Shown one piece after another: positions 2,971 to 10,698 of a stretch of 11,108 bases of DNA. The notes under the pieces are model-generated. The model saw only the letters and a list, made by a program, of their open reading frames with translations, was not told where the DNA came from and did no database searches. How positions within the stretch are numbered: the stretch's first letter is position 1; every line of letters starts with the position of its first letter. A program made the translations under genes and the position numbers. The stretch spans positions 1 through 11,108 of IMG/VR virus record IMGVR_UViG_3300034091_000153. One strand, given 5' to 3'.

Positions 2971-5259
2971 TCACGCAATGACGCTCCGAGTACACCACTC
3001 GTCAGGCATGGCTTCCTTGACTTTTTTTTCGAGCGGCCAGCGGCTTTGTATGCGCGAAGCGGAGTTCTCAAGTTCATGGAACGTCGTCCACCCCATAGCC
3101 GAAGCGAAGATATTGTCGTCATGCTGGCCTTGGGAATGGATCATCTCACTCTTTCCTTGCTCACCTGTATATTTACGAACGAAAGTTGCAAGCTGCCGGA
3201 TCAGTATGGGATCGTTGAGAACCATCCACCCCGTATTCACGGCGTCCACCCAGCGGTCAAGGAGGTACGGTCTCGTGTAAACACGGGTGAACCAGCCCTC
3301 CTGATGCCCGGAGTCAGGCAAAATGTTGCCCTTCTTATCGATCCTGAGCATGACGTGATGATCCAGAAATCCCATGATTTTCAGTTGGCTCTGGCATTCA
3401 TCTCCCGGCTTCCTGATTTGCTCGACGATGAACTTGACGATAAGGGGATTTGAAGAGGTGACATTACACTTTCCATCTGTTCCGTAAAGGACCGCCACTG
3501 CCGCCGCGATGCGCGACATTTGCGGCGAATTGACACGGATCGAAGTAAACGACGCCACCTGCACATCCGGCTCCTTACCATGTCCATGTTTCTGAACAGA
3601 AAGGCTGGCGCGATCCTCCTTCGGCTTGTTTAGGCCACCCGCTGTGTCGATAGCAATGCAATACTCAGCGCCCACTTGCGGCTCCTCGAAAATCAAGAGT
3701 TTGTCGAAACAGGCTTCATCAGTGGAATCATCGAACGAACGCATAGAAACCAGATTCCAACGGTACTCGTTATCATCCAGCCCTTTCCATTCCAAGATGA
3801 TTTCTGGCTCATCTGGATTTATCTCCTCGGCATTGGGCTGATATGGTTGATTTTCGCTGCCCATCAAGATTGTGCGTCCAGTAACGGCATAGGCGACATA
3901 ATTCTGTTCGCGGGCTTCGGTAACGAGGTTGATAGTTTCGCTGGCGAATACAGAATCATTCTTCGATTGAAACGCATCTTGGGGGGTCACGGCATTGGCG
4001 GCAAGGAACTCTCTCTCCGCGTGTTTGGCAATTGCTTCCTCATATCCGCATTGCCAGAACCATTGAAACTCACGCGGCATCTCCCACCGCTGGCCTAGTA
4101 TTTTCCAGAGATAGTCAGTGGACCGGACGTAAAGCTCGCCCCGCCTACGCATCTTCCGCGTAGCATCGGTGATGTTCTGCTCCCACGGTTCGGGGACGGG
4201 ATGTTGGCGCAACCAATCGGCCGGCGGATAAAGGTCACTAGCGCAGGCTGGGGGAATGAAGAACGCGGTGAAGCGCCCTTTCTTTGCAGCATAGAGTTCC
4301 CAACTCTCTTTCTGCCACGGCGTCGCGGTCGATCCCGTTCCTTCCAGCACCATGAACAGCGAGGCAATCTGGTGACAGGCCGGGAACAGACCTTCATCCA
4401 AGGTGTGCTTGGGATTCGTGTAGTCGCCGAGTTCGCTCAGGTGAACACAGGAAGGCGAATCGCCTTGAGCGATACCGACTTCCTGTGCGCCCGCCTGTAC
4501 CGACAACCGGGAACCGTTGGTCCAGCGCGGCTCGGCTGACTTCGTGGAAGTCTGACCGACGCGCAACCAGAACGGCAACTTGTCCTGACAGGTGTCGATC
4601 ATGTTCTTGAGCTTCTGCGATTGGGGGACTTGCACCGACGCCATGACCGCGTAGGTGTTTGCCACGTAGAGGATGCGGTGCAAAAAGAAAAGCGCCGTGA
4701 CCGTCGAGACGCCCAACTGGCGAGCCTTCAAGATGAAAAGCTGAATTGCAATCTGGAGATCATCGCATTCGGCCAGGAACGCAAAAAAGATTCTCTGCGC
4801 ATTCCGAAAATCGAAGTGAATGATCTGCGTGTTTGCGGCGCGGATGTAGGCATAGCGGGTGACAAAGTATTCTGCCGATGCTGAGCATAGGAAACGTTCA
4901 TTCGCAACCCATCGCTTGATTTTATTGACCGTTGCCACAGAGGGAGATTTGTCGTCCTTCCAGAAAAAGTAAGACCTTGCGCCGGTTTTCGATTTCGACA
5001 CATCGGCGTACTTCTGAATCTCCTCCTGCATGTAGTCGCACTCGGCTACGTCGTGGAAGCGCGGTTCCCAGCCGTTCCGGCGTGCGAAGTCTGCGACTGT
5101 GAGATTGACGATGCGAGTGCTATACGTTTGGCACCACCCTCGGCGCAACGCCGCCGTACACTTCGAGTTCGGCTCGCCCATGTCGGGGAAAGCATTATCC
5201 CAGGCTTCATCGGCATCGGTGTCAGCATCCCGCTCCTCTGGAGGCCGCCACCATCTCAC
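2971..5259 (-). CDS. terL: Terminase large subunit (ATPase plus RNase H-like nuclease), up to 762 aa; start uncertain
   Basis: Walker A-like ILKARQLGVST, Walker B-like CVHLSELG, coupling-motif-like LEGTG, nuclease acidic motifs IAIDTAGG, DRASLSV and HDDNIFA. Lies upstream of the portal. Confidence 0.93.
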   Translation of the reverse strand: MRWWRPPEERDADTDADEAWDNAFPDMGEPNSKCTAALRRGWCQTYSTRIVNLTVADFARRNGWEPRFHDVAECDYMQEEIQKYADVSKSKTGARSYFFWKDDKSPSVATVNKIKRWVANERFLCSASAEYFVTRYAYIRAANTQIIHFDFRNAQRIFFAFLAECDDLQIAIQLFILKARQLGVSTVTALFFLHRILYVANTYAVMASVQVPQSQKLKNMIDTCQDKLPFWLRVGQTSTKSAEPRWTNGSRLSVQAGAQEVGIAQGDSPSCVHLSELGDYTNPKHTLDEGLFPACHQIASLFMVLEGTGSTATPWQKESWELYAAKKGRFTAFFIPPACASDLYPPADWLRQHPVPEPWEQNITDATRKMRRRGELYVRSTDYLWKILGQRWEMPREFQWFWQCGYEEAIAKHAEREFLAANAVTPQDAFQSKNDSVFASETINLVTEAREQNYVAYAVTGRTILMGSENQPYQPNAEEINPDEPEIILEWKGLDDNEYRWNLVSMRSFDDSTDEACFDKLLIFEEPQVGAEYCIAIDTAGGLNKPKEDRASLSVQKHGHGKEPDVQVASFTSIRVNSPQMSRIAAAVAVLYGTDGKCNVTSSNPLIVKFIVEQIRKPGDECQSQLKIMGFLDHHVMLRIDKKGNILPDSGHQEGWFTRVYTRPYLLDRWVDAVNTGWMVLNDPILIRQLATFVRKYTGEQGKSEMIHSQGQHDDNIFASAMGWTTFHELENSASRIQSRWPLEKKVKEAMPDEWCTRSVIA
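5172..5247. repeat. 76-bp perfect direct repeat, copy in the 5' end of terL
   Basis: gctcgcccatgtcggggaaagcattatcccaggcttcatcggcatcggtgtcagcatcccgctcctctggaggccg, identical base by base to 5766-5841. Confidence 0.98.
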
Positions 5260-5438
5260 TTCCCCGTTTCGATCAACATATTTATGCGCTGATACAAAAG
5301 GGGACGCAGAGATTCGAGTGAATCTGCACCCTTCATTTCTGTATTTGCCGAGTAGAGCTTCCCGCTATCTGTTCTTACAAGCAGAATGGCGGTTGTTTTT
5401 CCGTGTTGCTTGACTGCATGTAAGTGTAATTCTTTCAT
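5256..5438 (-). CDS. Small hypothetical protein, 60 aa
   Basis: ATGA overlap with the upstream ORF at 5438-5435. Its TGA overlaps the terL GTG (GTGA 5259-5256). Confidence 0.65.
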   Translation of the reverse strand: MKELHLHAVKQHGKTTAILLVRTDSGKLYSANTEMKGADSLESLRPLLYQRINMLIETGK

Positions 5439-5713
5439 TCCATGTACCCCTTAATCCGTTGGATTTCAGGCGGAAGAATATGCTCCCACCGCGTTCCGGG
5501 AAAGGGCTTCTTCGTGCCATCTGTGGAGTGCCAAACCCAATGGCCCTGTGCGATGTACATCCCCGGCATCTCCCATCCCAGGCGGATGCGGTAGCACCTG
5601 CACTCAGCCTCAAGCGCATTGTTCTGGACCAAAATAGTGCGTAGAGAATTCTCAAGCAGCAAAATCCTCCGACTGCCCCATCTGCGAAGCGCCCAATTAA
5701 GAATCTTCTTCAT
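5435..5713 (-). CDS. Small hypothetical protein, 92 aa, Trp/Arg-rich
   Basis: ATGA overlap with the TerS-like stop (5713-5710), with GGAGG upstream inside the preceding gene. Confidence 0.7.
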   Translation of the reverse strand: MKKILNWALRRWGSRRILLLENSLRTILVQNNALEAECRCYRIRLGWEMPGMYIAQGHWVWHSTDGTKKPFPGTRWEHILPPEIQRIKGYME

Positions 5714-6510
5714 TTTGTCTCAGCCTCCAAGAGCCTATGTTTCGCAGCCGAAAATCCCTGAATCTGCTCGCCCATGTCGGGGAAAGCATTATCCCAGGCT
5801 TCATCGGCATCGGTGTCAGCATCCCGCTCCTCTGGAGGCCGTCCAAAGCCGAAGTTGATCTCCACTCCGCCCTTTTTGGTTGGTAGGAATCCCACCGCCT
5901 CGTGCATGACCCGCTGCGCCGCCACGTCTCCATGATCGTAGCGCAGAACCTTGCCATTTTCATCGAATACCGGTTTGCCGCTCACGATAACAGGTACTCC
6001 CTCGATAGCGGAGTCAACCGTCGCCTGTACTACGTCTGGATGGGCCAGAATTGCCTTGAGCGCGCTTTCTGTGGCCTTCATGGACTGGGCGGCCATCAGG
6101 ATCGCTCCAAGCATCTCTACGGGGCTTACACGCGCTCTGACGCACATCGCCTCGAATGACAAAGCGCCAAGGTCAGCAGCGCCGATTTGCCGCATGGCAC
6201 CCACAAACTTCATGGCGCACGGCTGATTCGAGACAGCGGCAAAGGACAGGATGCGCTGGCGTGGTAAACGGCCAGATTTCCCGCCAAGACAGCGCGTGAG
6301 GATTTCTGAGGGTTCGGTAGAGCAGAGCGCCACTTCGTCAGGATCGATGTCCAGGCGCTTCATCACCGTAAGCGGAGTTCGATTACGACTGAGCGCGAAA
6401 CCTTTGCTCGAAGCGCCCGACTGTTTCTTCCGGCTCAAGTTCGTTGTACTCCTGGACGGTTTGGGGAAGGGGACGGTCCCCGACTCGGCTGATGGTGGCT
6501 TCTGTTTCAT
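5710..6510 (-). CDS. Terminase small subunit-like protein; start may be 6549, 6510 or 6366/6363
   Basis: Largest ORF upstream of terL. The helical segment VVQATVDSAIEG...GDVAAQRVMHEAVGFLP, then beta-like GGVEINF and an acidic tail, resembles the C-terminal oligomerisation region of many TerS proteins. Inferred from pattern and synteny. Confidence 0.6.
   Translation of the reverse strand: MKQKPPSAESGTVPFPKPSRSTTNLSRKKQSGASSKGFALSRNRTPLTVMKRLDIDPDEVALCSTEPSEILTRCLGGKSGRLPRQRILSFAAVSNQPCAMKFVGAMRQIGAADLGALSFEAMCVRARVSPVEMLGAILMAAQSMKATESALKAILAHPDVVQATVDSAIEGVPVIVSGKPVFDENGKVLRYDHGDVAAQRVMHEAVGFLPTKKGGVEINFGFGRPPEERDADTDADEAWDNAFPDMGEQIQGFSAAKHRLLEAETK
5766..5841. repeat. 76-bp perfect direct repeat, copy in the 3' part of the TerS-like gene
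   Basis: Identical to 5172-5247, offset 594 bp. Both encode RPPEERDADTDADEAWDNAFPDMGE on the minus strand. Confidence 0.98.
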
Positions 6511-6604
6511 CTGCAACAGGATACTCCCTATCTGCCCAGCGTTCGGCAACTTTCACAGCTCGGGAGAGAATGTCGAGCAGGCGGTCAATCTGTTTGGTGG
6601 TCAT
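6383..6604 (-). CDS. Hypothetical protein, 73 aa
   Basis: ATG overlaps the end of the upstream ORF. Natural-looking helical/acidic sequence MTTKQIDRLLDILSRAVKVAERWADREYP. Confidence 0.7.
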   Translation of the reverse strand: MTTKQIDRLLDILSRAVKVAERWADREYPVADETEATISRVGDRPLPQTVQEYNELEPEETVGRFEQRFRAQS

Positions 6605-6929
6605 ATTTCAGCCCCGTTGGGAAGGTTTCCATGTATTCGTACTCCAGAGCGCCCGGAGCACGTCTATAGAAGTCGATCAAATCTGCCGTGTCGAATCCTA
6701 CCGAGAATCCCTGAATGGTGGCTCCCTCCGGTATCGTAAACAGGCCGCGATACTTTTCAATCTCAGTGGTACATCCCGTCAGCGAGTTGCGGTAGAAGAA
6801 CCGATAGCTCCACACCCCCGAATCAGAAAGTGCCCATCCGTTCGGAGGCGCAAAGCAATAGATTTTCCTCGGCACCAACGTGGCGACGGCCGCAGCACCG
6901 AGAAGAGATAAAAAGGCCCGACGGTTCAT
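6585..6929 (-). CDS. Hypothetical protein with twin-arginine (Tat)-like signal, 114 aa
   Basis: N-terminus MNRRAFLSLLGAAAVATLVP matches RRxFL plus a hydrophobic stretch. GGAGGAG RBS and ATGA overlap. Confidence 0.75.
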   Translation of the reverse strand: MNRRAFLSLLGAAAVATLVPRKIYCFAPPNGWALSDSGVWSYRFFYRNSLTGCTTEIEKYRGLFTIPEGATIQGFSVGFDTADLIDFYRRAPGALEYEYMETFPTGLKYDHQTD

Positions 6930-9571: not shown

Positions 9572-9651
9572 TTGACAAGTATGATAGAGTGCGCTATGGT
9601 GGTTGTGTAAGTGAGAGGACAAACACCATGTCCTCATGGAGATTGAAAATG
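9572..9651 (+). promoter_or_regulatory. Sigma70 promoter, conserved hairpin leader and RBS (copy 1)
   Basis: TTGACA (9572-9577), 17 nt, TATGGT (9595-9600). Leader GTAAGTGA-GAGGACA-aacacca-TGTCCTC-AT-GGAGA-ttgaaa-ATG. Confidence 0.8.
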
Positions 9652-10628: not shown

Positions 10629-10698
10629 CTATTATACAGCGCCGTATTAAGCTGTATTTGTAAGTGAGAGGCAACCAGCCTCATGGAGAATGAAAATG
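10625..10698 (+). promoter_or_regulatory. Sigma70 promoter, conserved hairpin leader and RBS (copy 2)
   Basis: TTGACT (10625-10630), 17 nt, TAAGCT (10648-10653). Leader GTAAGTGA-GAGGC-aacca-GCCTC-AT-GGAGA-atgaaa-ATG. Confidence 0.8.

What the first reader, a model, noticed from the sequence alone, without database searches (positions are those of the whole stretch)
5172..5841. Perfect 76-bp direct repeat links terS-like and terL in frame: possible excisable cassette giving a TerS-TerL fusion
Seen: 5172-5247 and 5766-5841 are 76/76 identical and 594 bp (198 codons) apart, and both genes read the repeat in the same minus-strand frame. One crossover would delete the last 18 TerS codons, the 92-aa and 60-aa ORFs and the first 4 TerL codons, leaving one continuous TerS-TerL ORF (981 aa from ATG 6510). 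Identity even at wobble positions implies a very recent duplication, ongoing conversion, or an assembly artefact. Inference: a recombinational switch between split and fused terminase, or a cargo cassette with a long target-like duplication. I know of no described example of this arrangement.
Basis: partly seen in the sequence, partly recalled or inferred. Interest (0 to 1): 0.85.

Follow-up and report, generated by a model that had tools for sequence, protein, structure and literature searches.

The report
Recombination scar between phage terminase genes
A perfect 76-base duplicate of the end of a phage's putative small-terminase gene sits in front of its large-terminase gene, and is best read as a recent scar of gene shuffling at an insertion hotspot, not as a programmed switch that fuses the two proteins.

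Summary
Window 5172-5247 and 5766-5841 are 76/76 identical, 594 bp apart and in the same minus-strand frame. Deleting one unit gives a 981-aa ORF. It is not an assembly artefact: the same 11,108 bp occurs with no mismatch in three assemblies, one a MEGAHIT k141 contig.

The switch reading has no support. None of 16 distinct relatives has the cassette or the duplication. No fused protein appears among 209 TerL homologues or the top 150 of 371 'TerS-like' homologues. The cassette holds no recognisable recombinase or nuclease.

The terS/terL junction is an insertion hotspot. Four relatives carry four other inserts, and one (L007) has a diverged duplicate of the terS tail beside an HNH-like gene.

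The window holds a second scar. The last 30 nt of orf60, its stop and the following ATG (5285-5252) are the old terS end and old terL start codon. A 127-nt block (GTGG, repeat copy 2, 47 nt of unknown origin) now separates that ATG from terL codon 2. The homologous start position reads ACG, so terL opens only from GTG 5259, through copy 2.

Best reading: a recent ectopic copy, or a converted relic, left by illegitimate recombination.

The parts
5710..6510 (-). Putative small terminase ('TerS-like', 266 aa). Assigned by position only.
   Evidence: It lies directly upstream of terL in all 16 distinct relatives and forms a conserved family (A1). No Pfam, PHROG, NCBIfam or PDB match. The best fold hits are two phage TerS entries at non-significant E 0.018 and 0.077.
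5766..5841 (-). Repeat copy 1 (R1), at the orthologous place in terS. It encodes residues 224-248.
   Evidence: Relatives have the homologous RPxEERD...AWDxAFPxLG segment at this position.
5710..5765 (-). Current terS tail ('tail_A', QIQGFSAAKHRLLEAETK*). It is of the AETK type, as in relative L005. Its stop overlaps the orf92 start (ATGA).
   Evidence: Significantly similar to the tails of L004, L005, L006, L018 and L019 (z 3.9-7.1). Subtype comparison.
5435..5713 (-). orf92, a cargo gene of unknown function, predicted as a long N-terminal helix plus a conserved C-terminal motif.
   Evidence: Four homologues at 51-70% identity in other phage contigs. In one unrelated phage it also lies between an Sf6-type TerS and TerL. 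AlphaFold2 model of low confidence.
5256..5438 (-). orf60, an ORFan cargo ORF. Its start overlaps the orf92 stop (ATGA) and its stop overlaps GTG 5259 (GTGA).
   Evidence: No homologue among 5.8 billion proteins. SD-like site at -8.4 kcal/mol.
5252..5285 (-). Relic of the earlier terS end and terL start. It comprises the last 30 nt of a GGK/AGK-type terS tail (now the C-terminus of orf60, INMLIETGK*), a TGA stop, a 1-nt spacer and ATG 5254-5252.
   Evidence: 24/30 nt identical to the terS 3' end of L037. Mean 15.7/30 over 16 relatives, shuffle p = 0.0004, and rank 1 of 294 stop-ending 30-mers. Collinear with the stop, one spacer base and start codon of L037, L042 and L055.
5222..5254 (-). A 10-codon ORF opened by the relic ATG, out of frame with terL, ending at a TGA inside copy 2.
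   Evidence: Read from the sequence. ATG 5254 has the better SD spacing (6 nt, against 1 nt for GTG 5259).
5172..5247 (-). Repeat copy 2 (R2), the extra copy. It encodes residues 5-29 of the TerL ORF as called.
   Evidence: Absent upstream of terL in every relative. Only this lineage's TerL has the 45-residue N-terminal extension.
5125..5171 (-). 47 nt of unresolved origin between R2 and the conserved TerL body. It holds an SD-like GAGGGTGG (5134-5141), an in-frame TTG (5146-5148) and ACG (5125-5127) where relatives have the terL start codon.
   Evidence: No significant similarity to terS tails, to the relic block, to sequence upstream of terL in relatives, or to the rest of the roughly 18 kb of this genome that was held. 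Weak leads only.
2971..5259 (-). Large terminase ORF (762 aa from GTG 5259). The conserved body starts at TAT 5124, which is codon 46.
   Evidence: PHROG terminase large subunit hits, best E 1.4e-10. Weak matches to the T4-type gp17 ATPase domain. 209 homologues, the typical full-length ones 716-724 aa and starting at M/L/V-YS.

Best explanation
The repeat is a real recombination scar in a phage whose terS/terL junction is a hotspot for inserted genes. I read the history in two steps.

Step 1. Cargo (orf92 and the 5' part of orf60) entered inside the old terS tail, about 30 nt before its stop. It came together with a replacement tail of another subtype. This matches homology-facilitated illegitimate recombination with a related phage. 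The old tail end, the stop and the old terL start codon remain as a relic at 5285-5252.

Step 2. A 127-nt block was placed between that old ATG and terL codon 2. The block is GTGG, a 76-nt copy of the phage's own terS segment from 594 bp upstream, and 47 nt of unknown origin. Copy 2 is therefore one of two things. It may be a recent ectopic (templated) copy made during an illegitimate repair or template-switch event. Or it may be an older displaced terS fragment kept identical to copy 1 by gene conversion. With 0 differences in 76 sites, divergence is below about 4% at 95% confidence.

Consequence. The old ATG is now out of frame, and the homologous start position reads ACG. The only ATG/GTG/TTG-initiated frames into terL therefore start upstream of the conserved body. 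Two of the three candidate starts, including the gene-callers' GTG 5259, read through or from within copy 2. TerL is most likely made from GTG 5259 by termination-reinitiation after orf60 (GTGA overlap). It would then carry an acidic, probably disordered N-terminal extension that repeats 25 residues of TerS.

A crossover between the copies can occur and would give an in-frame TerS-TerL fusion. I take this to be a rare, probably non-viable by-product and not a regulated switch.

Shown: the repeat, its presence in three assemblies, the relic junction, the lost start codon, the hotspot and the absence of fusions. Inferred: the order of events, the mechanism, the start codon actually used and the fate of the deletion product.
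For: - Repeat and frame.
- Three identical assemblies, including a k141 contig.
- Hotspot: 12 of 16 distinct relatives have terS and terL 0-5 nt apart, and 4 carry different inserts of 222-1868 nt.
- Parallel scar in L007: an HNH-like gene followed by a second terS tail (888-935), 27/45 nt identical to its own tail and 36/45 to that of L019.
- Relic of the old terS end, stop and ATG upstream of copy 2.
- Canonical start replaced by ACG while an SD-like site of normal strength is kept (-8.4 kcal/mol).
- All four genes are chained by ATGA/ATGA/GTGA overlaps, and no promoter or terminator lies in the cassette.
- Lower G+C in the cargo.
- orf92 is mobile among unrelated phages.
- The segment copied is predicted disordered (pLDDT below 50) and is variable in remote homologues, so an N-terminal copy is likely to be tolerated.
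Against: - The origin of the 47 nt after copy 2 is unresolved, so the exact event cannot be reconstructed.
- A discrete 76-nt ectopic copy with two abrupt borders has no well-documented mechanism in phages. The conversion alternative needs an older homologous copy, for which only weak traces exist (12/24 in register, p about 0.01, uncorrected).
- GTG 5259 has a poor SD spacing, so the start actually used is unknown.
- No reads were examined, so minority deletion variants cannot be excluded.
- The three assemblies may come from related samples.
Confidence: 0.6

Rival explanations
1. Recombinational switch or excisable cassette. Homologous recombination between the two copies is used by the phage to toggle between separate TerS and TerL and a single-chain TerS-TerL, or to shed the cargo.
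For: The geometry allows it. The repeats are direct and perfectly identical, the spacing is a multiple of 3, and the product is a 981-aa open frame. Deletions between direct repeats that fuse a gene body to a displaced downstream module are known for orphan Rhs toxins (Koskiniemi et al. 2014, as cited in PMC5361080).
Against: - No fused protein among 209 TerL homologues or the top 150 of 371 TerS-like homologues.
- No deletion-type relative or variant in the contig or protein collections.
- A deletion is irreversible, so it is not a toggle.
- The fusion loses the conserved TerS tail.
- No recombinase in the cassette.
- Contigs run through both copies unbroken in three assemblies, so the recombinant junctions cannot be abundant (inference).
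Confidence: 0.05
2. Assembly artefact. Only one copy exists and the assembler looped through a repeat of about k-mer size.
For: 76 bp is close to k = 77, which some assemblers use. Identity is perfect.
Against: The structure is identical in three separate assemblies with contigs of 11, 30 and 52 kb. One has the MEGAHIT k141 naming, where k exceeds the repeat. The two copies have different unique flanks on both sides, and each flank has its own comparative explanation.
Confidence: 0.03
3. Selected functional duplication. Either the TerS C-terminal acidic peptide is carried in cis at the TerL N-terminus to modulate holoterminase assembly, or the 76 bp is a DNA site (for example part of pac) that works better in two copies. 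Identity would be kept by selection and conversion.
For: The copied segment contains residues invariant among close relatives (R224, P225, D234, D236, W239, F243, P244, G247). The copy is in frame and open, and it is the only conventional way into terL. From general knowledge, pac sites often lie in or near terS.
Against: It is unique to one lineage among 16 relatives and 209 TerL homologues. The segment is variable in remote homologues and predicted disordered. Protein-level selection does not explain identity at synonymous sites. No binding or packaging data exist.
Confidence: 0.1
4. Decaying prophage. The 127-nt block is simply a lesion that has inactivated the terL start in a clonal, no longer packaging prophage. 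The repeat then has no consequence at all.
For: The ancestral ATG is out of frame and the homologous start is ACG. Repressor-type HTH and HTH_17 genes lie nearby. Zero SNPs over 11 kb in three data sets fits a clonal element.
Against: TerL is open for 762 codons with no other lesion. All neighbouring genes are intact and chained by overlaps. An in-frame GTG overlaps the preceding stop. The contigs are 30-52 kb viral contigs, with no host flank seen in the parts read.
Confidence: 0.12

Closest known systems
Accessory-gene (moron-like) and homing-endonuclease insertions at conserved gene junctions of tailed phages, here terS/terL
   Same: Small genes of foreign composition sit between two conserved, normally adjacent packaging genes. 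Different relatives carry different inserts at the same junction.
   Different: There is no promoter or terminator of its own, so it is not a classical moron. No endonuclease is recognisable in this cassette. The insert is flanked by a perfect 76-bp duplication of coding sequence, which such insertions normally lack.
Displacement of a gene's 3' end by homology-facilitated illegitimate recombination, leaving 'orphan' 3' fragments (Rhs/CdiA orphan modules; T6SS effector-immunity arrays, PMC5361080)
   Same: The incoming DNA brings a substitute 3' end for the upstream gene. The old 3' end is pushed downstream as a relic (5256-5285 here; the second tail in L007). Repeated homology then allows deletions that fuse the gene body to the downstream module.
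   Different: Here the downstream partner is a different essential gene (terL), not an alternative toxin tip. The repeat is an internal 76-nt piece and not the whole displaced end. No array of successive orphans is present.
Integrating elements that carry a replacement 3' end of their target gene (e14 and phage 21 in icd; many tRNA-gene integrations). Cited from general knowledge.
   Same: A duplicated target-gene segment flanks the inserted DNA. The gene stays intact because the element supplies a new end.
   Different: No integrase or att-type core is present. The cassette is 518 bp with two tiny ORFs, and the displaced copy has become part of the next gene's reading frame.

Membership tests
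Terminase small subunit (TerS) | Gene immediately upstream of, co-oriented with and translationally linked to terL | tested here: met
   In 12 of 16 distinct relatives it lies 0-5 nt from terL.
Terminase small subunit (TerS) | Sequence or profile match to a described TerS family | tested here: not met
   No Pfam, PHROG or NCBIfam hit for the protein itself. No TerS family hit in Pfam or PHROGs for 85 remote homologues. No PDB sequence match.
Terminase small subunit (TerS) | TerS-like fold (N-terminal DNA-binding helices, oligomerisation core, C-terminal TerL-binding tail) | tested here: inconclusive
   AlphaFold2 model with mean pLDDT 61 and a helical core at 45-170. No significant PDB hit. 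The two best BFVD hits are TerS entries, but at E 0.018 and 0.077 with TM below 0.2.
Terminase large subunit (TerL) | Profile match to TerL families, including the ATPase region | tested here: met
   PHROG 5989, 2 and 6681 'terminase large subunit', best E 1.4e-10. Weak matches to the gp17 ATPase domain, E 0.28. No Pfam hit.
Programmed DNA switch (site-specific or homology-driven) | Both states present in the population or among close relatives | tested here: not met
   Only the split state was found. There are no fused proteins and no deletion junction in the collections searched. Reads were not available.
Programmed DNA switch (site-specific or homology-driven) | A dedicated recombinase encoded in or next to the element | tested here: not met
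   orf92 and orf60 have no family hits. Other ORFs in the window likewise have none.
Moron | Own promoter and terminator flanking the inserted gene | tested here: not met
   No sigma-70-like promoter and no terminator excess in 4900-6700. The genes are chained by 4-nt overlaps.
Free-standing homing endonuclease cassette | HNH, GIY-YIG, LAGLIDADG or similar nuclease gene in the insert | tested here: not met
   No such hit for orf92 or orf60. The L007 insert, by contrast, has a weak HNH_3 hit (E 0.0015, below cut-off).
Homology-facilitated illegitimate recombination scar | One junction in homologous sequence and the other at a non-homologous site, with a displaced remnant of the recipient gene | tested here: met
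   The current tail is homologous to relatives' tails. The right-hand junction falls inside the old tail, and its last 30 nt, stop and ATG survive at 5285-5252.
Assembly artefact | Structure not reproducible, or repeat at least as long as the assembler's k | tested here: not met
   Three assemblies are identical, one named k141.

The most novel reading that the evidence does not exclude
The duplication is functional. This phage makes a TerL that carries, in cis, the conserved acidic C-terminal peptide of its own small terminase, acting as a built-in mimic or tether that changes how the holoterminase assembles. In addition or instead, low-frequency recombination between the copies produces a working single-chain TerS-TerL. 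Perfect identity would be maintained by conversion.
Probability: 0.07. Interest if true: 0.75.

Novelty: new variant of a known kind. Interest (0 to 1): 0.38.

Why it matters
If the reading is right, this is a clean natural example of how an essential phage gene survives the destruction of its own start. An illegitimate event wedged 127 nt behind the terL start codon, and the gene now appears to be read from a fortuitous GTG through a borrowed piece of the neighbouring gene. It also documents, with two independent scars (this window and L007), that cargo enters the terS/terL junction by recombination that displaces the 3' end of terS. That is useful for annotating metagenomic phages, where terL starts and 'TerS-TerL fusions' can be miscalled. 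It is also useful for understanding where accessory genes accumulate. It does not open a long-standing question unless the TerL extension or the deletion product proves functional.

Tried and rejected
1. The 47 nt after copy 2 as a decayed terS tail. Gapped alignments to 12 tails were not significant (z below 1). Only a fixed-register match of 12/24 nt (p about 0.01, uncorrected) was found. A frame-2 'AEGGAK' motif plus the SD-like site looked suggestive by eye but was not tested separately. Left open.

2. The 47 nt as the 3' end of a small gene like the 76-aa insert of L048. That would share the frame of the relic ATG and end in PNV* overlapping the terL start. At peptide level p = 0.007 before correction for about 15 comparisons. 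At nucleotide level not significant. No homologue of that ORF in viral contigs, and a degenerate pattern found only the window's own genome. Left as a lead.

3. Tandem duplication of the whole terS-end unit. The relic block and the end of the 47 nt are not similar (10/40, p = 0.58). Rejected.

4. A second source for the 47 nt within the same genome. Nothing longer than 11 nt in about 18 kb.

5. Search for the repeat core in metagenome contigs gave 0 hits. In viral contigs only the two known contigs were found.

6. Function of orf92. The AlphaFold2 model is too poor for a fold search, and there are no family or defence-system hits.

7. TerS identity through remote homologues. 371 were found, none annotated by Pfam or PHROGs as TerS.

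8. Literature search for natural TerS-TerL fusions. None found.

9. Rfam scan of the window gave no hits.


Full report
**The observation.** The repeat is exactly as described. Window 5172-5247 equals 5766-5841 (76/76). It extends to 79 nt with one mismatch, and the spacing is 594 bp. No other direct repeat in the window exceeds 27 nt at 74-83% identity, so chance is excluded.

The genes around the repeat lie on the minus strand:
- a 266-aa ORF from ATG 6510 to stop 5710 ('TerS-like')
- orf92, 5435-5713
- orf60, 5256-5438
- a 762-aa ORF from GTG 5259 to 2971

Both copies encode RPPEERDADTDADEAWDNAFPDMGE in the same frame. Joining the flanks in a script gives a 981-aa ORF.

**Not an artefact.** The window is IMG/VR contig 3300034091_000153. 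The same 11,108 bp, with both copies and no mismatch, is part of a 52-kb contig from IMG 3300035696. It is also part of a 30-kb ENA contig named k141_2047225. By MEGAHIT's naming convention (my knowledge) that contig was built at k = 141, which is longer than the repeat. Each copy has its own unique flanks, and both sets of flanks make comparative sense, as shown below. Reads could not be checked, and the samples may be related.

**What the genes are.** The large ORF is a large terminase. It hits PHROG terL families at E 1.4e-10 and weakly matches the gp17 ATPase domain. It has 209 homologues.

The upstream ORF belongs to a conserved family (alignment A1). That family sits directly in front of terL in every relative, but it matches no TerS family, PDB sequence or fold at a significant level. 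Among 371 remote homologues, 85 were scanned and none gave a TerS hit in Pfam or PHROGs. 'TerS' is therefore a positional assignment.

orf92 has four homologues (51-70% identity) scattered in other phage contigs. In one unrelated phage it again lies between an Sf6-type TerS and TerL, next to a tRNA-Trp. orf60 has no homologue at all. Neither ORF matches any nuclease, recombinase or defence family.

**Relatives.** Searches gave 16 distinct relatives with a readable junction. Their TerL is 74-87% identical to the window's.

In 12 of them terS and terL are 0-5 nt apart. TerS ends in ...KHKLLEGGK* or a variant, and TerL starts with ATG, TTG or GTG followed by TAY AGC/TCN (M/L/V-YS...).

Four relatives carry four different inserts at this junction:
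- L005: two ORFs, 606 nt
- L007: an HNH-like ORF plus another ORF, 1.1 kb
- L019: about 1.9 kb, including an ORF that looks by eye like a DNA methyltransferase (no Pfam hit)
- L048: one 76-aa ORF

None has orf92, orf60 or a second copy of the repeat. All typical full-length TerL homologues in the 5.8-billion-protein collection are 716-724 aa and lack the first 45 residues of the window's TerL. The longer ones (1062-1106 aa) mostly carry intein domains. None is a TerS-TerL fusion. The top 150 TerS-like homologues are all 294 aa or shorter.

The junction is thus an insertion hotspot. The duplication is private to this lineage, and natural fusions were not found.

**A second scar, which changes the picture.** The last 30 nt of orf60 (5285-5256, INMLIETGK*) are a displaced terS tail end.
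- 24/30 nt are identical to the terS end of L037 (KHKLLEAGK*).
- The mean over the 16 relatives is 15.7/30, with shuffle p = 0.0004.
- It ranks first of 294 stop-ending 30-mers on this strand, above the true terS end, which is of the other (AETK) subtype.

The collinearity continues. The window has GGGGAAGTGA-G-ATG where L037 has GGGGAAGTGA-C-TTG-TAC, L042 has ...TGA-C-GTG-TAC and L055 has ...TAA-G-ATG-TAC. So the earlier terS stop, the one-base spacer and the earlier terL start codon (ATG 5254-5252, with good SD spacing) are still there, immediately upstream of copy 2.

It follows that the cargo entered about 30 nt before the old terS stop, together with a new tail. That current tail is homologous to the tails of L004, L005, L006, L018 and L019. 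It also follows that the block 5251-5125 has been wedged between terL codon 1 and codon 2 (TAT 5124). The block is 127 nt: GTGG, copy 2 and 47 nt.

Because 127 = 3n + 1, the old ATG now opens only a 10-codon ORF that ends inside copy 2. GTG 5259, five bases upstream and overlapping the orf60 stop, is in frame with terL. At the position homologous to the relatives' start codon the window has ACG, still preceded by an SD-like GAGGGTGG of normal strength (-8.4 kcal/mol).

**A parallel in L007.** There an HNH-like gene (weak HNH_3 hit) is followed by a second terS tail (888-935, ETWSADKHKLLEGGK*). This tail is 27/45 nt identical to L007's own tail and 36/45 to that of L019. Displaced terS 3' fragments are thus a recurrent by-product of insertion here. 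In L007 the copies are diverged, as expected for donor and recipient of different lineages.

**Mechanism.** The left part fits homology-facilitated illegitimate recombination, with a homologous anchor in terS and an illegitimate joint in the old tail. The same process has been proposed for displaced 3' ends in Rhs and T6SS loci (PMC5361080).

For copy 2 itself two routes remain open.
- A recent ectopic, templated copy of 76 nt made during an illegitimate repair or template-switch event in the first codons of terL.
- An older displaced terS fragment homogenised by conversion with copy 1.

Zero differences in 76 sites bound the divergence of the copies at about 4% (95%). The nearest sampled relatives differ by 13-16% even at the TerL protein level.

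The 47 nt after copy 2 would decide between the routes, but their origin is unresolved. They show no significant similarity to terS tails, to the relic block, to relatives' sequence upstream of terL, or to the rest of the genome held. Two weak leads remain: 12/24 nt in register with the current tail (p about 0.01), and a peptide-level resemblance to the end of L048's small ORF in the frame of the relic ATG (p = 0.007 uncorrected).

**Consequences.** The four genes are chained by ATGA/ATGA/GTGA overlaps, and no promoter or terminator lies in the cassette. TerL is therefore most plausibly translated by reinitiation at GTG 5259, which is also what two gene callers chose. That gives it a 45-residue extension whose core repeats 25 TerS residues.

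This segment is acidic. It is predicted disordered (pLDDT below 50) and is variable in remote homologues, so it is probably tolerated and not required. Initiation at TTG 5148 or ACG 5127 cannot be excluded.

A crossover between the copies would remove the conserved TerS tail, with invariant S254, K257, H258, L261 and E262, and would tie TerS to TerL. I expect that product to be defective. It was not seen in any collection.

**Comparison and verdict.** This works like displaced-3'-end scars at recombination hotspots and like cargo insertion at conserved phage gene junctions.
- It is not a classical moron, because it has no promoter or terminator of its own.
- It is not a homing-endonuclease cassette.
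- It is not a recombinase-driven switch.

Two features are unusual. A perfect internal coding segment of one packaging gene has been copied into the start of the next. And that essential gene has lost its canonical start and is apparently read through the copy. I found no paper describing a natural TerS-TerL fusion or this arrangement.

I rate it a new variant of a known kind, of moderate interest. A functional reading, either a TerS-mimic extension or a usable fusion, remains a low-probability possibility.

Noticed in passing
window 5125-5141: At the position where all relatives have the terL start codon (ATG, TTG or GTG before TAY AGC), this phage has ACG. An SD-like GAGGGTGG of normal strength still precedes it. 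This could be near-cognate initiation or a recently dead start.
   Followed up: partly
window 5222-5254: The relic terL ATG has good SD spacing and now opens a 10-codon ORF (MVAASRGAGC*) that ends inside repeat copy 2. It could act as an upstream ORF affecting terL translation.
   Followed up: no
proteins P0025, P0044, P0072, P0093, P0110; L042:2449-3572: Several TerL homologues of this family are 1062-1106 aa and carry intein or LAGLIDADG domains (PF14528, PF14890). L042 has an insert of about 1.1 kb splitting TerL near residue 272. TerL itself is also a target of mobile elements.
   Followed up: no
L007:284-935: An HNH-like ORF (weak HNH_3 hit) inserted after terS is followed by a second, diverged copy of the terS tail (888-935). 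This is the same architecture as the window but without homogenisation.
   Followed up: yes
L028:2259-3260; L029:267-1300: In an unrelated phage with an Sf6-type TerS (PHROG 1482) and a different TerL (PHROG 979), an orf92 homologue (70% identical) also lies between terS and terL. A tRNA-Trp (2863-2938) and a small zinc-ribbon-like ORF lie alongside it.
   Followed up: partly
L005:1561-1683 and window 6588-6929: The first ORF inserted at the L005 junction shares its N-terminal 41 residues (59% identity, twin-arginine-signal-like MNRRxFLxLLG) with the window's 114-aa ORF, which lies upstream of terS. A small gene, or its 5' part, has moved around the terminase genes.
   Followed up: partly
L019:5398-5433: A perfect 18-bp tandem duplication (two copies) lies inside an ORF of the 1.9-kb junction insert. 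The first ORF of the insert starts with a GTG overlapping the terS stop and looks by eye like a DNA methyltransferase, but has no Pfam hit.
   Followed up: no
L004, L008, L011, L018 (terS stop/terL start): In these relatives the terS stop TAG is followed directly and in the same frame by the terL ATG. tblastn therefore aligns 'through' the stop. This can mimic a fusion in automated comparisons.
   Followed up: yes
window 9595-9651 and 10648-10698: Two adjacent short repeats (24 nt at 79% identity and 20 nt at 95%) recur with spacing of about 1050 bp in the region of small regulatory genes. They may be a repeated promoter, operator or ribosome-site motif.
   Followed up: no
L036:7414-8402: An ENA contig carries two inverted copies of the TerL 3' end back to back. 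It is probably a chimeric or palindromic assembly.
   Followed up: no
L054, L055: Relatives occur on contigs binned as an Acidobacteriaceae MAG and as a Candidatus Saccharibacteria MAG. The host of the family is therefore uncertain, and at least one binning is likely wrong.
   Followed up: no
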